DNA of 63,831 nt, filler included, from Sluysia triapertura (Eukaryota), in the NCBI GenBank assembly GCA_046118255.1. It is 5 parts of 5 records of this genome, joined end to end, with 100 filler letters (N's around TTAATTAATTAA, not from the genome) between each part and the next. Parts side by side here need not be neighbours in the genome. Positions count along the whole stretch, not along the records: positions 1 to 12,173 come from JBJNIA010132290.1; 4 more parts are not named here. One strand, 5' to 3'. Shown here in pieces: positions 1,340 to 18,265 of this stretch (the stretch's first letter is position 1; every line of letters starts with the position of its first letter). The notes beneath the pieces are model-generated. The model saw only the letters and a list, made by a program, of their open reading frames with translations, had not been told where the DNA came from and made no database searches. The translations under genes and the position numbers were made by a program.

Positions 1340-1495
1340 GTCTTTATATACGTTGTTGAAATTTATTATTAATTAACCTTGTTCTACATTGTTGAATTTT
1401 AATTTATTAACTATTTTACGATTAAATAACCTTGTTATACATTGTTGAGTTTTACTTTATTAAATATTTCACGACTAATTAACCTTTATCGCACG
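1340..1495. repeat. Degenerate ~53-bp tandem repeat (2 full units plus partials)
   Basis: AACCTTGTT(C/A)TACATTGTTGA...ACGA recurs at 1375 and 1428, and AACCTT again at 1481 (53-bp period). Confidence 0.75.
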
Positions 1496-2705: not shown

Positions 2706-2840
2706 ACTTATATTAGTTATTAGAAATAATAATGATTATAATAATTATGTTTGGTTAACCTAATAATTCAAAATTTAATATTATCAAGTTATCTTTCCAC
2801 ATAAAACAATCGTTACATTGATTCAACAATCAACCAAATA

Positions 2841-2996
2841 TGTTGGGGTAAAAAGGCCTAAGGTGCCATAGCGTAAAATTGACTACAATAATCTAAGATC
2901 GTTAAACGGGGATATAACTCAGTGGTAGAGCATTCGAACTGCGCAGCGATGGTTCCGGGTTCGATCCCCGGTCAGTCCATTTTACGAAGTTTAACA
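2841..2996 (+). mobile_element. Short TGTT...AACA element (solo-LTR/Ginger-like) with an internal tRNA-derived unit; complete copy
   Basis: Starts TGTTGGGG, ends TTTAACA, AATA on both sides (2837-2840, 2997-3000). Homologous copies at 23696, 28523, 54172 and 61949(-). Confidence 0.75.
2908..2979 (+). tRNA. tRNA-like (pseudo-tRNA) Pol III unit inside the repeat; resembles tRNA-Cys
   Basis: A box TAACTCAGTGG, D-arm GGTAGAGC, perfect T-arm CCGGG-TTCGATC-CCCGG, 72 nt followed by a T-run. Acceptor and anticodon stems are mismatched, so probably not a functional tRNA. Confidence 0.7.
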
Positions 2997-3119
2997 AATA
3001 CATTAAATGCAATAGATTAAGTTTCCTATAGCATAACATAAATTCTTAAGTAATACCTACAGTAGAAGAAGCAAAAACTGAGTCAATCTAGAATTGGATT
3101 CATTAAATTTAATACTATT

Positions 3120-3340
3120 ACTGAGTTTTTCTTACTTAGACTTACGAAAAAGTAGAGGATTTTCTTTCGGTGAGTCCACTAACGTAGTAGACTTACAGAT
3201 TATGGCTAGTCGTTGGATTTTCAAATCACTTAAAATTTAATATGGAGGTTACTTATCTGGCTTTGTCTAAAAATTTTATGAGATTATTACAGATTAATCT
3301 TAATGGTTATTAAATATGAATCCTATGAAAAGGATTTGAA
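3120..3340 (+). repeat. Structured dispersed repeat, copy A (bulged stem-loop family)
   Basis: GTGAGTCCACTAACG...CGTTGGATTT (3170-3220) matches the reverse complement of 24079-24130 and resembles 11299-11338. Confidence 0.6.
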
Positions 3341-5271
3341 TTAAGTGTTTATTTTGCGTATCCGAATGAAATTCGGACAAAACTTTTATGCACTTGCTAA
3401 TTTATTATTTTAAAACTATGTAATTTACTAATTGTATCTTTTTACAAAAAATCAAAATTAAGTAAAAGATGATTATATATTGCAATAAGGACAATTAATA
3501 AAGTATTACAGAAAAAACGATTAGAATATGTATGTGAATGATTTTTCTTAATTAACTATTATAAGTTAATCTAATCTAATAAATTTTAAGATAATATTTT
3601 ACGATAGAACCGTGAAAGGGTTCTAACTCTAATTCAAAAATTAATTTAAGTATATTTTACGATAGATACGTAAACGTATTTGCATCTTATAAATATAAAT
3701 TAACGTTGGAATAATATCGTTCTAGTAAACAAAGAAAATCATTGAAAATCTTGATTACTTTTGGCTCTTTACGTGATTAACAAATTTTGGTTGATAACTT
3801 TTGGTAGTCAAATTTTGATTGCGAAGAACACATTTTTGATTATGTAAATCAAATTTTTTGTGTAAAACAAATTTTTGCTTGTGTGATTTGTACAAAATTT
3901 TTTGCATATATACATTGATTTTACTTGTCCTTAAACGATATTTAAACTATAGTATTTAATTTACAAATTGGTTAATATTTTGCAAATTAATAATTTACGA
4001 ACAAATTAATAAAAATACTTACATTTTAATATTTAATTCAATATTTTATTCTTAAATCCAAACAGAATAATAAAAATCAATAAAATATTATAATCGTGAC
4101 AAATAATAACAAGATATGATATAGAATGAATAACATATACATTTACAAAAATCAATAAATTGTCAGTACACACACATATTATAGTTATAGTGCACACACA
4201 TTATTAACATTATAAATAAGCAGTCAAAAGTTTTATCAGTTTTATTGCACTAAATTAATACTTATTTGGTTACTTCTATATCATTCTATGTAGATTGTTA
4301 ATGTTATTTAAATCATGGTCCTGAAATGTTTTTGTGGGGTTTTTATCTGTTAAATAAGTTTATTTTTAATTGAAGTTTCACTAAATTTAAGAAAATGTAC
4401 GCATTTGAGCTTCACTTAAATTGCTAAAATTATGCAACAGTTTTATGTAGGTTTAGTTTAATTATTCTGAAATGGCAATTTGCAGAGCATTAGTGATCCG
4501 TGAAAATGGAAAATGTTTTACTGCGTATAGTTATTGAAGAAAACAATTTGGTTGCAATTTATTTATATATTACATTTTAAACAACATTGATATTTAAATT
4601 TTTTAAAAACGTTCCATCTAAGAATGCTATGAGCACTGGTTTAATCATTAGCGTCCAGTGGATTTCAAGTTTTTATAAGGAATATGTTCATTATAAAGTT
4701 TGTATAACTCAAATTCGCAAAATTTAGTGCATTAATGATTCACTAGACGTTTTATGCTGTAGATATTTTAAAATACTCTTTGTATCAATTATTTCGTTTT
4801 ATAAACACTTAAACTTTGAAAATAAGAAAAATTAATATAAAAACAGTTCAAATAGATCTTGCTTTTTACGCAACCGTTTCTTTTATATTATTCTCATACT
4901 TGTATTATCTGATATGTTGACATAAGCGTTTAGTGTGCTACCTCATATTCATGTATTCTTTTATAATTAAAACCAAATTCATCTAAATAATAATAATAAT
5001 AATATTAATAATAATAATAATTACATTTCAATTTATTGATTAAAAATGTTGTTTAAAAAAGTTTACAGTAGCCATTTTATTTAATGACTTCAAAAACAAA
5101 CAATACATCAAATCAAAAACTACAAAAGACAGTTTCTAACTTAATCTCAACAGTTATTACGTTTTCGTGACAATAGATTGTTCAGTATGAGAATTCAGTA
5201 AACATTTTTGGTGTTTTAAGCATTAATATACATATTAATGATATACATATTAAAATTCGTAATGGACCACA

Positions 5272-5778
5272 TTGTGTTTTTTTGTATTTGATTATAAACA
5301 TGATGTAGATGTATTTTCTTTACGAGTTGATTTTCCTCGAGATTTTAAGCGAAGTACTTCACGTCGTCATGACAATAGAGATCACAGATTTGATCGCGAT
5401 TCAGATAACAGACGTAGTAGTAATATTAGTAATAGCGACCATTTAGAACCATACGAAATGTATATACCAACATCATTTAGATACTACCCATCCATTGGTA
5501 TTTGTTACAATGATTATCGTAATATGGCTCATTTTCATAATTATAAGAACACTAATTCCAGCAATCAACATATTCATGATTCTATTCGTTATCAAGTAAT
5601 ACCAACACCTCCAGCTTCACTCGACACGTCAAACAATGTTCATAAACATAATAATTCAACAAATTTTATAAATGTCATTAGTAAGCAATTTTATACTCTT
5701 GATTTTTATTCTGAAATTTTTATAATTCAATGTTTTGTTGTATGTATTAAATTAGCAAAAATTTATTGTGTTATTTAA
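5272..5778 (+). CDS. Probable exon encoding an Arg/Asp/Ser-rich low-complexity protein of unknown identity
   Basis: 168-codon open frame with raised GC and protein-like composition (RRHDNRDHRFDRDSDNRRSS). Likely donor GTAAGC near 5681. No family recognised. Confidence 0.4.
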   Translation: MCFFVFDYKHDVDVFSLRVDFPRDFKRSTSRRHDNRDHRFDRDSDNRRSSNISNSDHLEPYEMYIPTSFRYYPSIGICYNDYRNMAHFHNYKNTNSSNQHIHDSIRYQVIPTPPASLDTSNNVHKHNNSTNFINVISKQFYTLDFYSEIFIIQCFVVCIKLAKIYCVI

Positions 5779-6119
5779 AAGTTTAATTTTGATAAAGTAA
5801 AAGTCCTTAAGAACCATTTTTAAATTAAAGAATCGAATAATTTTGTAATTAAATTATCAGAAAATAAAAATTTTATTTTATTAGCTTGTAAAAAATTTAT
5901 ATGAATAATCATTGTTTTAATTTTAACAAACAATATCTTTTAACACAAACATTTCAACTTTATATATAAAAATTATAATAATAATTAATAATAATAATAT
6001 AATCGTTTCGTTTAATTAAAATACTAATAATAATAATTAATGATAATAATAAGGATAAAAATAAAATAAAAATAAAAATGCACATATTGCATAAATATTT
6101 ATCTTAACACATATCAGAG

Positions 6120-7022
6120 TCTGCTTTTTATTCATTAAGTTGTTTTGCTAATGTTTCTATTTTCGATATGTAAATAAATTTTTTATTTTAATTTTTCATC
6201 CATATTTCAAATTCAGTAACATTCTTTCTAGTAAAATGAAGATCTAAAATAATATCTTGAAGTGAATTCTACTTGAGTTGAAATGTCTATAGTTGATACT
6301 CGTTTTACGGAACGTTTGTCTATTATTAAATCTAGATAATCTATTGTCTAATAATTGTCTAATCTATTGTGATAATAATTGACTCAAAAATTGTGCTTTT
6401 CTGAATCGAGTTTTTAAGTCACAATCTATTTATAAGGAGTTTCTTGAGTCATGATAAAGTTCAAAAAACTTTTTATACTATCTTTTCGTATAACTGGTAA
6501 GAATAGCAAATTAAAAAGACGTGAAAATTTTATCACTTTCTTTGGTAACATCAAACTTAAGTTGCATAAATAAATCTAATATATCAATAGCTCTTTGCAC
6601 ATTTAAGATATTACGTGAGAACTCCAATATAATTATTATCAGTTTCAACAATTTTTCATTATTTACTCAAAGTAAAAGAATTGATTTTTTTGGACATTCA
6701 TGAAAACATTAGTTTAATCTAAATAAATTAATTCGTAAAATAACTTGAATATTTGTAAGTTATTCTGACGTAGCTGTTCACTAGAATAAATTGATTGAAT
6801 TACATCTGACAGTAAAATTTTTTCATTCATCATCATTACGTGACGTTGTTTTGATAATCTTGAATGACCACGTAACCATAATGCGTGCTTTACATTATCG
6901 GTATCATCTTCCAAACATCTAGAGCTATTAGTAGTTTTTGTAAAAGTATTATTATCTTCGCTTTCCGCAGCAATAGAGGCATGAGCTGATAAATTGTGAG
7001 AATCGACAGCATGACTAAACAT
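6120..7022 (-). pseudogene. Decayed intronless orphan ORF
   Basis: 102-aa ORF (6714..7022) continues as protein-like sequence broken by stops to about 6120, preceded by a C/A-rich leader. Confidence 0.35.
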
Positions 7023-7875
7023 TCGAAATAAAATACCAAACAGAGAGAAAAGTAAAAAATATGAAAGAAAGTTGTGAAAGGAAATTGGCTAAGTTAAAGA
7101 TGTGAAAAGAAATTCCATTCAGTTTATTGTTGTTTTTCAATTTTAAATACAAATTTAATGATTTTTGATGTAATGAGTGCTTTGAGTGTTATAAAATTGT
7201 GAATTTTGTTCAGTGTGATATGTACAAGTTTTGTGTAAATGTTGCGTCTTTGAAAATTATTAATTACGCTAAATCAATATCAATTTAATTAACATAAATA
7301 AAATCTCAATAATTTAAGTAGTCACTATATCAAGTATAAATTTTCAGTAATTCTATTACTTTGATAATAATAATTATTATAATAATTATAATTATAATAA
7401 TTAAATAATAATAATAATTTAGTTTTTGAAAATCAAATCAATAACGACAACACAATAATTTACTGGTTAAATACAAATTATTATTCTTATAAATATCCAC
7501 TAAACAATAATAAAAATGAGTAAAATGACGTATCAAGAATATAACAAACTATCTAATGACGCAATAAATACTAAATATTAATTATTATTCACGATTATTT
7601 CTTAATAATAATCAAAAATAAATTTCCCAAAAACAACACAAAGCAAAAACTATTCTAATTAAATCCCCCAAAAAATAATACTATTTTTAATTATAAAATA
7701 AATTCAAAAATTTATTAAAACATGGATCTTCTCATTTGCATTGTTATGTTAGGTTAAATTTTTTGGTATTCCTTTTTATATTTTCTCATCATCCAATCAT
7801 TCCCAATTTTTTGATTAAACATTCTATCAGACAAATCACTGAAACATTCTTTGAGAAATAATCCAACAATAATAA

Positions 7876-7907
7876 CTTTGACAGTGACATGGTACAGACT
7901 GTCAAAG
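7876..7907. promoter_or_regulatory. Perfect 10-bp inverted repeat CTTTGACAGT-N12-ACTGTCAAAG
   Basis: Read directly; same TGACAG core as the palindromes at 2650 and 50221. Confidence 0.55.
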
Positions 7908-7909
7908 CT

Positions 7910-8345
7910 TATTAGATACAAAACAAAAAAAATTGATTTACGATTATCTATTATTTTCTTTTACTCTACTCAGTCTACTTTACTCAACTCACATTAATAT
8001 AATAATCATTATTATTGTTAACATACATAAAAAATAATGAATTTAATTTTAGTTTTCCGAATTTAATTGATTTTTGGTTTTTCTCACCCCATTTTCTTAT
8101 GGAAAATATTTTAAGCTTCTTCTTACTCTACAAACATTTCAAACTCACTTTTAGATTCTCCTCTTCCATTTCATATTCCATTCATTATATTCGCATCATT
8201 ATAAATGTAAAAACTTCAACATAATTAAGAATTAATTAAAATTTGACTTTGCTCAATATTAAGGCTTTTCTTGCATGAACTCGGTCAAACCATACCTTCA
8301 TCGAAAGGTCTTTTCAAAACAAATGCATACACAGTTTCAAATTAA
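7910..8345 (+). repeat. Interspersed repeat; inverted copy at 48255-48705
   Basis: CATGAACTCGGTCAAACCATACCTTCATCGAAAGGTC (8274-8310) aligns to the reverse complement of about 48288-48324; similarity extends over ~430 bp. Confidence 0.75.
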
Positions 8346-8702
8346 GTGTACTTATATTATTTTATTATCAAGTTTATTACAAGTCGATTTTATTATTTAT
8401 TATTACCGACTTAATTATTAAATATTATTATTATTAAAATTTAAAAATAATAATTTATGACGTGCCAGAATGTACCTTGATTTACCTTGACATGCTCAAT
8501 TAAAATTTTCGTCATATTTAAAATGTTATATGTATAAATTCATTTCATAATAAACGTATATAGACTAAGTATTTAATCACCTTAAATTCAAAATTCAAGG
8601 TACAATATTCACACTTGTGTATGCTTATCTTTGTATTGTTTTAAATTGCATAGTGTAAAATATATATTTTCGAAAAACATACATTGGTTGTATAAATAAG
8701 TT

Positions 8703-9039
8703 ATGAAAGAACCTAATAACAACGATGAGAAAGATGTTATTAAAACACGAAAGGAGAATGTAGTTCGAATATCAAATAAAGTTGAAGAGATTTTGATTAG
8801 TGACACTCACTATGCTACAACTGAAGAATCATTAAATCAAAATATCCAAAGATCAAGTTATTCCACTTTTCACGAAAGTGGAATTTCACATTACGACAAT
8901 GACAGTATTGAAAGCGAACTTTATGATGAAAATCGAGAAAATTCCGCAACAATGTCTTCTCAATCAACATATACATTTCGAGAAGGTAGTTTTTTAACGA
9001 AAAGTATGATTGAACCAGAACTAGATATGTACTTTAAAG
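8703..9039 (+). CDS. SLC38A7/8-like amino-acid transporter, exon 1 (long hydrophilic N-terminus)
   Basis: ATG-initiated open frame ending AAAG|GTAT (phase 1), in frame with the next exon. Confidence 0.7.
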
Positions 9040-9247: not shown

Positions 9248-11254
9248 GTTAGTTTACTTATAATAAACATTTATGAACAGAAATTACATTTATATGAATT
9301 AACATAAAATTCTTTAGCCTATTAATTAATTTAATAACTTAGCATTATTAATATTTATAATATTAATAATAAAATAATATTATTAATAATAATATTTATA
9401 ACAAAATAGTTGTAGATTTTAATCTTATTCAAGTGCTAATTTTTAATGTTTTACCTTAACCAAAATATAAATTATAAATTATCTCAAGCAATGAATATTA
9501 CAACTTAGATATTATTCGTCCCTGTTAATCAGGAAACAAATTAATGAAAAATTAAAAAAATTTGATGTTTTAAAATAATTACAAAATTTTAATTTAAATT
9601 TAATTTTGAATTATTGTAATTATTGAATTATTGCTTGTAGTAATTTCTTTGTAAACTAAGATATTTTATGACTTAGTCACTATAAGTCTTTTTACAAAAT
9701 GTGCAATCAGTTAGGTTGCTGTACATTATTTCGAAACCCACTAATGATAGTTGATCGAGCAATCTTTATTCTTTCTAGTATGATTATATTAGAATAATGC
9801 GCACTTATTGGAATTTATAAAATGTCATTCCATATTGTGCATTTGAGATTGTGTTATTTAAAACTTTAATATCATTATATCTAGCTTTGTAGCTTTCTGC
9901 TTCTTAGTTTGACTTGAATAAGAATTGTTAAAATTATCGTACGTATTCATAATTCATGAAGAACAATATCACAAAAGCATAATTAAAGCAAAGATCTGTG
10001 TTTTTAAATATTAGCTGAAATGGAAATTTTAACTTAAATATTCTATAATTTATCAATATTTTACACTAATTAAATGCTACTATGCATAATATATGGATAT
10101 ATTTGTGGTGCATAGGTATTTTCCAGTTAAATTTACATAGCGGTATTTTAAGCCCATTTAGAATTTAATTTAATTTAGATTAATTTATACATTTTAAAAA
10201 TAAAGTGACTTTGTTATTTAATTTCAAAATATGATACTGATTTTAAAATGGTCTTAACGATTTAACAGTCTTAACAAGTTTATAACTGTGGTGATTCAAA
10301 AACAATAGTACACTTTTGAACTCTGCACAAATCATTTTATTCATATTCAATCATTTCTTATTTTGTGTGCACATTCTCACACATTTTCACACTTGAAGCA
10401 ACCTTCTCTACATCATATAATATCAACTTTGATTAAGATTAAATACTTTTTATTTGTCATTTTATTAATTTAATTATTGTAATTCTTTTATTATTCTCTT
10501 GATATTGTTTTATTAATTTTACTAGTTATTGTTTCAATATCAAAAATTTTTATGATTTAAAATTTAAAAAGAATAATTATATTCAATACCCAAAAACATG
10601 TTAATATCTTCAACAGATGCACATTGTAAAAGTTGATCGTCTGCTCAAGTGTGCCAAATTGTCAGAATAATAATCTCTCGATGCGAAGTTCATAAATGAT
10701 ATCATACATTTTAAGTTACTCCTAATATTAAGAAAAGTTTTAATTAAACAGTGGAACGAAAAAAAGAAGAAACTAACGAATTTTAAAAATTGAGTCTGAA
10801 TCGGTTAATACTACATTGAATTTGATTTTGAATTATAATTTTGAATTTTCTGTAAGAATGAAATTTTCTGCACAACCTTCCTAACTGTATTATGTTCAAT
10901 TCACTATATGTAGAAATAGACCAGGAATACGAAACCAAATATAAAATGTCTGAGGTATATTTTAATGTAACCAGTAGTACGGGAGTTAACTAATATTCAT
11001 TATGATTAATTTTGGTCGAATCAGAAAGAAGGATCGTGTTAGATCTGTTTTAGAACCAGCAAGATAATAAGGTGTTAAAATTATTGGATAAAATATTGAA
11101 TATAAAATAATACAATACAGCTAGAAAACCAAGTAGAGTGAAACAAAGCTTGAGAATCGAAAGCCAATGTTTGAGAATGAATTTTTAACAGTATAATTTA
11201 ATGTTAAATTATTCTGATGTATTGAGTTAAGAATTAAAAAGAATAATGTAATTG

Positions 11255-11640
11255 GTTATTTTAAATAGTCTATTTCCACCAATTAATTGTTTAGTAAAAT
11301 GAGTCCGCCTGCGACCCTAGTCTTACGCACTAGGATTTGAAGAAATTTGACTTAAAAGAACATATGGAAGTCAAATAATACAATATGTCGGTAGTGTTAT
11401 TAATTAATTAGTTAATTCGTTTTAGTTAATTAGTTTTAATGCTTGATAATCGTGAAAGTCAAAAAATATTGAATCTTAAAACTGCGCAATAATGTTATGC
11501 TTTGAAATTATGATGCAACCGATTTATTTTCCGCTTTTGCAGAGATTAAGTTTGTGAGATTTTATATAGGATCCTCTTTGGACAGAATCTCTGAAATAAT
11601 TGATTTTTCTACAGAATTATAATCGGTTTTAACAATTAAG
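11255..11640 (+). repeat. Structured dispersed repeat, copy B
   Basis: ATGAGTCCGCC...TAGTCTTA...AGGATTT (11299-11338) flanked by hairpins with perfect stems TAATTGGT/ACCAATTA and ATTTGACTT/AAGTCAAAT. Confidence 0.5.
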
Positions 11641-12173
11641 AGATCAATTTTATTAATTTAAAACTGTATAAATTAAATTTAATTGAATTTGTATATTTAT
11701 ATATTATTAACTTTTTAAGCCCAATTTAAAAGGGTCTTTAATTAAATTTTTCGAGCGTCATATATAAGCGGCTGTTTTACTTTAAGTATAATTTCTTTGT
11801 ATGAAAACGATAATATTAATATGCAATATTCACAAAAACGATTTTATGAAAATGTACAAAATGATTTAGAATTTAATTGATTAATATTATGCAATAATAT
11901 CAAAACTTTCAAGAATTATATTTTTAGATTCAAATTAAAGGATTCTTGAAATTATTACTTAAAATTTTGAGTTAATATTACAAACACATTAAAATATGTT
12001 AAAATTTATAATTATAAACTAAGGTTTAATTTAAATATTATCGTAATTAATATTTAATAATTTAATAATTAATGTTTTCTCTAGATTAATTTTTTGTATT
12101 AAAATTTTTTCACAAGTCAAGATTCTCAAAATTGTTAATTTTTATTCAAACGAATATTAATGTAATGTTATAC

Positions 12174-18094: not shown

Positions 18095-18265
18095 TAGATT
18101 GAACTGGAGCATCATAGTGCTCTGTTTTTTGTTTCCGAATTAATTTTATTAATATTATGGATCCGCCTAGAGTACACGTTTTATATTCTCACGAAAGACG
18201 TACTTATAGGATTTAATTAACTTTAACAAAGAAGGCTTCAGTGTATGAAATATTAATTCGATTTT
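18095..18265 (+). repeat. Structured dispersed repeat, copy C
   Basis: GAACTGGAGCA...TGCTCT hairpin, then ATGGATCCGCC...AGGATTT (18157-18214) enclosed by CGAATTAAT/ATTAATTCG. Same layout at 46899-47110. Confidence 0.6.

What the first reader, a model, noticed from the sequence alone, without database searches (positions are those of the whole stretch)
3120..3340. Dispersed family of bulged stem-loops with conserved pairing but divergent sequence
Seen: six hairpins (3170-3220, 11299-11338, 18157-18214, 24130-24079 minus, 23926-23872 minus with its end cut by a linker, 47011-47070) follow one plan: a G/U-rich basal stem (e.g. GAGT/ATTT), a 3-nt YCR bulge (CCA, CCG, TCA, TCG), a C(C/T).../...GG upper stem and a variable loop. 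Upper stems differ yet still pair: CTAACG vs CCAACG with CGTTGG; CCTAATAAG/CTTATTAGG vs CCTAATAtATACG/CGTATTATTAG, an apparent G-C to T-A swap. Copy D links the two hairpin types through an AACTGGAG motif also seen in copies C and E. Inference: a ~300-400-nt structured RNA (or ssDNA) module under structural constraint, such as a non-autonomous retroelement, a priming/packaging signal, or an unknown ncRNA or ribozyme. No canonical hammerhead core was found.
Basis: partly seen in the sequence, partly recalled or inferred. Interest (0 to 1): 0.72.

Follow-up and report, generated by a model that had tools for sequence, protein, structure and literature searches.

The report
Retrotransposon LTR hairpin, read backwards
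The "dispersed structured RNA" is the end of the long terminal repeat of a very abundant Ty3/gypsy-type retrotransposon family, read on the antisense strand: a conserved hairpin flanked by short boxes that match the tRNA-Met primer, so it is an ordinary kind of element with a tidy, retrovirus-like priming region.

Summary
Window 3120-3340 lies inside a 1.09-kb solo LTR (3119-4209, sense strand is window minus). The LTR has TG...CA ends and a 4-5 bp target duplication. It belongs to a Ty3/gypsy-like superfamily in a 619-Mb AT-rich eukaryotic genome.

The hairpin motif occurs 3,604 times, against 14 for the control pattern. In 393 places the LTR end is followed by an invariant 18-nt primer-binding site. 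This site is complementary to the 3' end of an elongator tRNA-Met gene.

The two main stems keep pairing through compensatory changes between LTR families. They are part of a box identical to the T-arm of the same tRNA (positions 48-56).

Best reading: a cis-acting R/U5 leader structure of the retroelement RNA, with PAS-like contacts to the tRNA primer. It is not a free-standing ncRNA or ribozyme. The LTR identity is shown; the priming role is inferred. No RNA data exist. Folding energies are only weakly better than shuffles.

The parts
3119..4209 (-). Solo LTR of family A, 1,091 nt. Read on the sense (minus) strand it runs TGTTAA...CAG(T)A. It contains the whole finding region.
   Evidence: The left boundary is sharp in 25+ copies. 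The right end ...TATTAACA is shared by copies with otherwise different ends. There are more than 2,000 first-look candidates in the genome, and scored copies are 77-88% identical. No primer-binding site or gag lies beside it in the window.
3114..3118 (.). Left copy of the target-site duplication (ACTAT). The right copy is ATTAT at 4209-4213, or CTAT/TTAT if the LTR is taken as ending in CA.
   Evidence: One search compares 5 nt before the TG with 5 nt after ...TTAAC. Results: L012 AAATA/AAATA, L025 AATAG/AATAG, window 4 of 5, L003 4 of 5, L004 1 of 5.
3170..3220 (-). The outer stem is 3179-3184 with 3211-3216. The inner stem is 3187-3190 with 3206-3209, and one of its pairs is broken in this decayed copy.
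   Evidence: Covariance model hit of 67.5 bits, pair counts, and a strand-neutral G.U versus A.C count of 34 to 35.
3170..3177 (-). Box 1. The + strand reads GTGAGTCC, which equals tRNA-Met positions 49-56 (GTGAGTTC) at 7 of 8 bases; the one difference would still allow a G.U pair. On the sense RNA it is complementary to the 5' half of the T-arm of the primer.
   Evidence: The tRNA gene is read. GTGAGTYC occurs in 21 of 29 PBS-bearing LTR ends sampled without regard to the hairpin, at +35 to +58. Exact matches to the tRNA reach 10 nt.
3243..3249 (-). Box 2. The + strand reads TGGAGGT, which equals tRNA-Met positions 41-47 (3' strand of the anticodon stem plus the variable loop).
   Evidence: GGAGGT occurs in 15 of 29 sampled LTR ends; the 9-nt tRNA match TCTGGAGGT occurs in 6 of them, against a background of 0.05 per 330 nt.
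3145..3151 (-). Degenerate remnant (CGAAAAA) of the conserved GAATAAA word. In 5' LTRs this word is complementary to the TTTATTC spacer next to the primer-binding site, giving a U5-leader-like stem of 7-10 bp.
   Evidence: GAATAAA is present in 24 of 29 PBS-bearing ends. The inverted repeat TTTATTCTAT/ATAGAATAAA is seen directly (for example in L079).
11244..12022 (-). LTR of family B, which may reach about 12157 and is then cut by the contig end.
   Evidence: A family-B locus (L038) has an ORF 45% identical to the gag, on the opposite strand beside the LTR.

Best explanation
The window copy is a decayed solo LTR.

Shown:
- The LTR has TG...CA termini and a 4-5 bp target duplication.
- In 5' LTR copies, the terminus is followed by a 10-nt spacer and an 18-nt primer-binding site complementary to the 3' end of elongator tRNA-Met(CAU).
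- After that come gag, a zinc knuckle, protease and a Ty3-like reverse transcriptase on the same strand.
- A hairpin of about 45 nt lies 50-100 nt inside the LTR end. Its two main stems are kept by compensatory changes between LTR families.
- Directly 3' of the hairpin (in RNA sense) is an 8-10 nt box complementary to the 5' half of the T-arm of the same tRNA. Upstream of the hairpin is a second box of 7-9 nt, complementary to the 3' strand of its anticodon stem plus the variable loop.

Inferred:
- On the genomic RNA the hairpin and the two boxes form, with the primer-binding site, the platform on which tRNA-Met is placed and activated to start minus-strand DNA synthesis.
- This would work in the manner of the primer activation signal and U5 stems of retroviruses.
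- The GAATAAA/TTTATTC complementarity across the LTR end would close a U5-leader-like stem.

I put the LTR identity at about 0.95 and this specific priming role at about 0.5.
For: - Repeat family with a sharp boundary and thousands of copies.
- The invariant word CTGGTCCTCACTCTGGGCACCAGTTTATT precedes the + strand TG start in 393 places, with 0 for the control.
- Its last 18 nt before the spacer equal the 3' end plus CCA of a tRNA gene with the T-loop TTCGATC (6 exact hits, control 0). The full gene has the anticodon loop CTCATAA.
- A family-A copy has a gag 73% identical to it.
- On one contig the order is zf-CCHC, RVP, then RVT_1 with YLDD.
- The reverse transcriptase piece matches Ty3 RT best (4OL8, E 8e-27, against 2e-11 or weaker for other solved RTs).
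- Target duplications.
- Covariation in the stems.
- tRNA-identical boxes at fixed positions.
Against: - There is no RNA evidence at all. Only one run, not recorded as RNA, holds the window.
- The transcription start and poly(A) site are unmapped, so whether the hairpin is in R or U5 is open.
- Folding energies are close to shuffled controls, and RNAalifold on sense-strand leaders gives almost no covariation term (-0.06) and a partly different inner pairing.
- Only three or four pairs covary, and the copies are related by descent, so the shuffle test overstates independence.
- The two boxes lie 5' of the primer-binding site in the reverse order to that needed for one continuous duplex with the tRNA.
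- Integrase and the polypurine tract were not found or not looked for.
Confidence: 0.8

Rival explanations
1. The pairing matters in DNA rather than RNA. The window + strand is the sequence of minus-strand strong-stop DNA, and the hairpin (with its complement in the 3' R region) helps or accompanies the first strand transfer, as TAR and cTAR do in HIV-1.
For: The stems are Watson-Crick on both strands (G.U 34 versus A.C 35). Family-level wobbles (CTTA/TAGG, the type-5 T.G, the basal G.T pairs) exist only on the + strand. The + strand folds slightly better in several copies.
Against: It requires the hairpin to lie in R, which is unknown. The basal G.T 'stem' is explained by tRNA identity instead. 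It does not account for the two tRNA-matching boxes.
Confidence: 0.15
2. There is no selected structure. The conserved words are linear signals (tRNA-complementary boxes, protein or integrase sites, perhaps a splice donor), and the stem complementarity is inherited from one ancestor plus a few chance double changes.
For: The z-scores are weak. The window copy's best fold is a different one. The RNAalifold covariation term is about 0. Most stem columns are more than 90% invariant.
Against: Three independent both-side changes are fixed in whole families, and there is also a fifth hairpin type with a largely different stem sequence that still pairs. Slid controls collapse.
Confidence: 0.15
3. The hairpin loop presents a 5' splice site or U1-binding site (sense strand GGUAAGU) used for a subgenomic, envelope-type mRNA or to silence the 5' LTR poly(A) site. 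This does not exclude the best explanation.
For: GTAAG is conserved at the 3' side of the loop in most types. One related element carries glycoprotein gene remnants.
Against: The type-5 loops lack the GT. There are no RNA reads to show a junction.
Confidence: 0.1
4. One reading: an autonomous structured RNA or ribozyme, or a SINE-like non-autonomous retroelement, transcribed from the + strand.
For: The hairpins are dispersed and conserved. A tRNA-like sequence lies 140 nt upstream.
Against: No Rfam family reaches E 1 apart from that weak tRNA-like hit, which belongs to another repeat. The unit has LTR ends, a target duplication and, elsewhere, a primer-binding site, gag and pol on the other strand. 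There are no A and B boxes and no tail.
Confidence: 0.02

Closest known systems
Primer activation signal (PAS) and extended tRNA contacts in the HIV-1 leader (PMC1865047)
   Same: Both have an 8-nt motif in U5, tens of nt upstream of the primer-binding site, that is complementary to the 5' half of the T-arm of the primer tRNA. [quoted passage not shown] Both lie next to U5 stems.
   Different: The host element here is Ty3/gypsy-like, not a retrovirus. The primer is elongator tRNA-Met, not tRNA-Lys3. The box abuts a separate covarying hairpin rather than being masked in the extended PBS stem. Here there is only sequence complementarity, with no functional test.
U5-IR and U5-leader stems and the U5/T-loop contact of avian retroviruses (from general knowledge; U5-IR is mentioned in PMC3601003)
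   Same: Both have a stem that joins U5 to the sequence beside the primer-binding site across the LTR end. Both have a U5 hairpin close to the primer-binding site.
   Different: The sequences are unrelated. The stem here (GAATAAA/TTTATTC) shows no covariation, because one arm is invariant.
Ty1 boxes and the Ty3 bipartite primer-binding site in yeast (reviews PMC5371799, PMC4974528)
   Same: These are LTR retrotransposons whose RNA pairs with more of the primer tRNA than its 3' end. The reverse transcriptase here is closest to Ty3 RT.
   Different: Ty1 and Ty3 use initiator tRNA-Met, and their extra contacts lie elsewhere (downstream of the primer-binding site, or at the 3' end of the RNA). No equivalent hairpin is described for them, to my knowledge.
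R-region hairpins of retroviruses (TAR, the poly(A) hairpin); conservation of long R regions is linked to stem-loops in PMC3601003
   Same: Both are stem-loops conserved inside otherwise fast-evolving LTRs.
   Different: Whether the hairpin here lies in R is unknown. There is no sequence similarity.

Membership tests
LTR of an LTR retrotransposon | Terminal TG...CA dinucleotides with sharp boundaries shared by many copies | tested here: met
   Read on the + strand, copies begin TG(C/T)... and end ...TTAACA. On the sense strand this is TGTTAA...CA.
LTR of an LTR retrotransposon | Short (4-6 bp) target-site duplication around solo copies | tested here: met
   two copies are perfect at 5 of 5, and two (including the window) match at 4 of 5, among five or six testable copies. 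Chance of 5 of 5 in this base composition is about 0.005.
LTR of an LTR retrotransposon | Primer-binding site complementary to a tRNA 3' end just inside the 5' LTR | tested here: met
   an 18-nt site for elongator tRNA-Met, 10 nt from the LTR end, found in 393 places.
LTR of an LTR retrotransposon | Two identical LTRs flanking one internal region; polypurine tract before the 3' LTR | not tested
   Contigs are short and no more genome sequence could be fetched.
Ty3/gypsy (Metaviridae) | gag with a zinc knuckle, then protease, then a reverse transcriptase of the Ty3 type | tested here: met
   (PF03732, zf-CCHC, RVP, RVT_1). One search gives Ty3 RT as the best solved relative, at E 8e-27.
Ty3/gypsy (Metaviridae) | Integrase downstream of RT-RNase H | tested here: inconclusive
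   No integrase ORF of 60 aa or more lies downstream of RT in the one long locus (L101). That copy is degenerate there.
Retroviral-type primer activation signal | Motif upstream of the primer-binding site complementary to the 5' half of the T-arm of the cognate primer tRNA | tested here: met
   The + strand CGTGAGTTC equals tRNA positions 48-56.
Retroviral-type primer activation signal | The motif enhances tRNA-primed initiation and changes with the primer-binding site when the primer changes | not testable with these tools
   This needs biochemistry, or LTR families with another primer. Family B appears to use the same tRNA (L038 flank).
Self-cleaving ribozymes and other Rfam families | Match to a curated covariance model | tested here: not met
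   at E up to 1 the only hit is a sub-threshold tRNA-like one at 2908-2979.
DNA transposon / MITE | Terminal inverted repeats | tested here: not met
   Beyond TG/CA the two ends are not inverted copies of each other.
tRNA-derived SINE | Pol III A and B boxes at the 5' end and a 3' tail | tested here: not met
   None is seen in the element. The tRNA-like piece at 2908-2979 lies outside the repeat boundary.

The most novel reading that the evidence does not exclude
A large Ty3/gypsy-like lineage uses a three-contact platform for its primer, elongator tRNA-Met. [quoted passage not shown] The two boxes bracket a covarying hairpin. If so, primer-activation logic of the retroviral kind would predate or extend beyond Retroviridae, and could be studied across thousands of natural variants in one genome.
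Probability: 0.4. Interest if true: 0.5.

Novelty: new member of a known kind. Interest (0 to 1): 0.3.

Why it matters
For the scan, this finding should be filed as repeat annotation rather than as a new RNA class: it is a solo LTR plus a second LTR fragment. The residual interest is comparative. The family gives a clean natural example, outside retroviruses, of U5 sequences matched to parts of the primer tRNA other than its 3' end, next to a hairpin kept by compensatory change. That supports the view that extended primer-template contacts are a general feature of LTR retroelements. It also offers many natural variants for testing that view.

Tried and rejected
- Ribozymes and known RNAs: an Rfam E-value scan of the whole piece found nothing but a weak tRNA-like hit. 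ARAGORN found no tRNA.
- Coding: ORFs are sparse under genetic codes 1, 4, 11 and others, and Pfam found nothing for the window's ORFs.
- tRNA-derived SINE: rejected, because the repeat boundary lies 140 nt downstream of the tRNA-like piece.
- LINE or SINE 3' stem-loop with 5' truncation: considered because coverage falls away from the sharp end. Dropped when a common far end, a target duplication and the primer-binding site appeared.
- HDV-like or hammerhead ribozyme at an element's 5' end, spliced-leader RNA (because of the conserved GTGAGT), snRNA promoter element, Helitron end, terminal inverted repeats: each considered by eye and dropped on the evidence.
- Strand from wobble pairs: uninformative, at 34 versus 35.
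- Expression: only one run, kept as contigs and not recorded as RNA, holds the window.
- First tRNA pattern, which assumed a fully Watson-Crick acceptor stem, found nothing. Allowing G.U found the gene.
- More genome sequence could not be fetched.
- Pfam did not name the gag-like ORFs of L030, L027, L013 or L038. BLASTP linked two of them, L030 and L038, to the named gag.

Full report
**What the window is.**
- The piece is 12,173 nt at about 23% G+C and almost without long ORFs under any genetic code.
- It is contig C132290 of a 619-Mb assembly in 263,945 contigs, so it comes from an AT-rich eukaryote.
- An Rfam scan at E up to 1 gives only a sub-threshold tRNA-like hit at 2908-2979 (25.3 bits). 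ARAGORN finds no tRNA.

**The finding region is part of a dispersed repeat.**
- A search of the genome with window 2880-3420 returned more than 2,000 first-look candidates.
- All 39 scored copies other than the window itself start within query positions 219-309, that is window 3098-3188; most start near window 3121. They are 77-88% identical.
- Aligned with their flanks, the copies share a sharp left boundary (+ strand TGCTGAG...) with unrelated sequence before it.
- Long copies run to about window 4100-4219. Copies with otherwise different right parts all end in ...TATTAACA.
- The second hairpin in the piece (11299-11338) lies about 50 nt inside the left boundary of a different, older repeat, family B.
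- Relatives of family B show that the window copy has lost about 15 nt from the middle of that hairpin.

**The hairpin is real and very common.**
- The pattern GAGTCCNCC, then 25-55 nt, then GGATTT has 3,604 exact hits against 14 for the reversed control.
- Across the listed hits and fetched loci the flanks differ widely, but the plan is constant.
- The outer stem is CCAACG/CGTTGG, or CCTACG/CGTAGG in family B and a few other copies (e.g. L059, L064).
- The inner stem is CTAG/CTAG, CTGG/CCAG or TTGG/CCAA.
- A fifth type has a largely different stem that still pairs.
- I built a covariance model from 29 ungapped copies and aligned 95 matches from 100 sources. On that alignment:

| Measure | Result |
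|---|---|
| Cells forming a standard pair | 93.9% |
| Cells changed on both sides | 57, against 22 +/- 6 in shuffles (0 of 500 reach it) |
| Cells paired with the 3' partners slid | 17-49% |
| AU to UA | 4 sequences |
| CG to UA | 14 sequences |
| AU to GC | 38 sequences |

- These are family-level events, so they amount to about three independent compensations, plus those of the fifth type.
- Thermodynamics are unimpressive. The z-scores run from -0.2 to -2.7, and the window copy prefers another fold in which GTGAGTC pairs with GACTTAC.

**What it is.**
- Four of the 29 family-A copies, and a copy of another type, share the same sequence just before the TG start.
- Searching that word, CTGGTCNTCACTNTGNGCACCAGTTTATT, gave 393 hits and none for the control.
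- Nearly all of the 30 fetched places show, after it, the TG start, a GAATAAA word and the hairpin.
- Read on the other strand this is: LTR end ...TCTCACA, a 10-nt spacer, then TGGTGCCCAGAGTGAGGA.
- That 18-mer is the complement of TCCTCACTCTGGGCA plus CCA.
- The genome holds tRNA genes ending TTCGATC-CTCAC-TCTGGGC-A (6 exact hits, control 0).
- One full gene was printed (C215247:3097-3170). Its reverse complement has the anticodon loop CTCATAA, a U31-U39 position and an ordinary T-loop, which marks an elongator tRNA-Met (read by eye).

**The coding side of the element.**
- One is Retrotrans_gag (PF03732, E 1.5e-6, above its cut-off).
- A family-A locus has an ORF 73% identical to it, and a family-B locus has one 45% identical.
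- On contig C14090 the same strand carries, in order from the primer-binding site: gag with a CX2CX4HX4C knuckle, aspartic protease (RVP) and RVT_1 with YLDD.
- The reverse transcriptase piece matches Ty3 RT far better than any other solved RT (4OL8, 8e-27; next class 2e-11).
- Solo copies have target duplications, counted as 5 nt before TG against 5 nt after ...TTAAC. Two are perfect and two, including the window copy (ACTAT/ATTAT), match at 4 of 5.
- Hence window 3119-4209 is a solo LTR whose sense strand is the window minus strand. The hairpin lies 51-101 nt from its 3' (U5) end.

**The unexpected detail.**
- The conserved words that flank the hairpin are pieces of the primer tRNA.
- In 29 LTR ends chosen only by their primer-binding site, GTGAGTYC occurs in 21, at +35 to +58, and GGAGGT occurs in 15. 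The background for each is about 0.05 per 330 nt.
- Exact matches to the tRNA reach 9-10 nt. 16 of 29 hold an exact 8-mer of tRNA 39-56 in this orientation, against 1 of 29 in the other and a mean of 0.6 for shuffled 18-mers.
- On the sense RNA these boxes are therefore complementary to the primer.
- The conserved GAATAAA (24 of 29) is complementary to the invariant TTTATTC spacer next to the primer-binding site. This gives a 7-10 bp stem across the LTR end, like a U5-leader stem.
- The primer-binding region also folds on itself.

**Mechanism, and how sure.**
- The LTR identity and orientation rest on several independent lines, and I hold them at about 0.95.
- It is inferred, at about 0.5, that the hairpin and boxes act in tRNA placement or primer activation on the genomic RNA.
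- Wobble counts in the stems are symmetric (34 G.U against 35 A.C). The strand that folds cannot be told from sequence, and a role of the complementary hairpin in minus-strand strong-stop DNA remains possible.
- The boxes are in the wrong order for one continuous duplex with the tRNA.
- RNAalifold on sense-strand leaders recovers the outer stem but gives no covariation bonus.
- No RNA data are available.

**Novelty.**
- Conserved stem-loops in LTRs and extended primer contacts are known in retroviruses and in Ty1 and Ty3 (PMC3601003, PMC5371799).
- This is a new member of that kind, in an unnamed AT-rich genome.

Noticed in passing
window 2839-3006 (tRNA-like core 2908-2979, + strand): A degenerate tRNA-like sequence with good A-box and B-box-like words but a broken anticodon arm (Rfam 25.3 bits, below threshold; ARAGORN finds none). 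It is itself part of another repeat, with copies in L019, L023 and L035 at 82-92% identity. It is possibly a tRNA-derived SINE head or a pseudogene family.
   Followed up: partly
L101 about 7010-8968, minus strand (contig C14090): Frameshifted pieces of a Monjiviricetes-type viral fusion glycoprotein gene. They match profile positions 3 to 622 in order across five ORFs. They lie between the gag and the protease-RT of a retroelement that carries the same primer-binding site and hairpin. The last piece is in the same ORF as the protease. This is an unusual gene order, or a rearranged or nested copy.
   Followed up: partly
Hairpin loop, e.g. window 3193-3199 read on the minus strand; L068, L079: On the sense strand the 3' side of the loop reads (G)GTAAGT in most hairpin types, which is the consensus of a 5' splice site. 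It is absent from the fifth hairpin type. Its function is unknown.
   Followed up: no
window 3170-3197 and the same place in other copies: An alternative + strand pairing of GTGAGTCC with GGACTTAC competes with the long hairpin and is the minimum-energy fold of several copies. On the sense strand it has one or two A.C mismatches.
   Followed up: partly
window 3570-3674, inside the LTR: Two direct copies (47 nt, 58 nt apart, 70% identical), each ending in TTTTACGATAGA, lie in the presumed U3 part of the LTR (D6).
   Followed up: no
window 1362-1467: Two tandem 53-nt units, 87% identical (D3).
   Followed up: no
window 5420-5979: An unrelated repeat. It is 77% identical to L006:103-618 on the other strand and overlaps the 171-aa ORF at 5263-5775, which has no Pfam match.
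   Followed up: no
genome, 10 places listed: A variant of the tRNA-Met 3' part with ATCAATC in place of the T-loop TTCGATC occurs at least 10 times. This may be a tRNA-Met-derived repeat or a pseudogene family.
   Followed up: no
L038 about 1470-1500: Beside a family-B LTR the + strand reads ...ATCTGCGCACCA, which looks like a decayed copy of the same tRNA-Met primer-binding site. If so, family B uses the same primer.
   Followed up: partly
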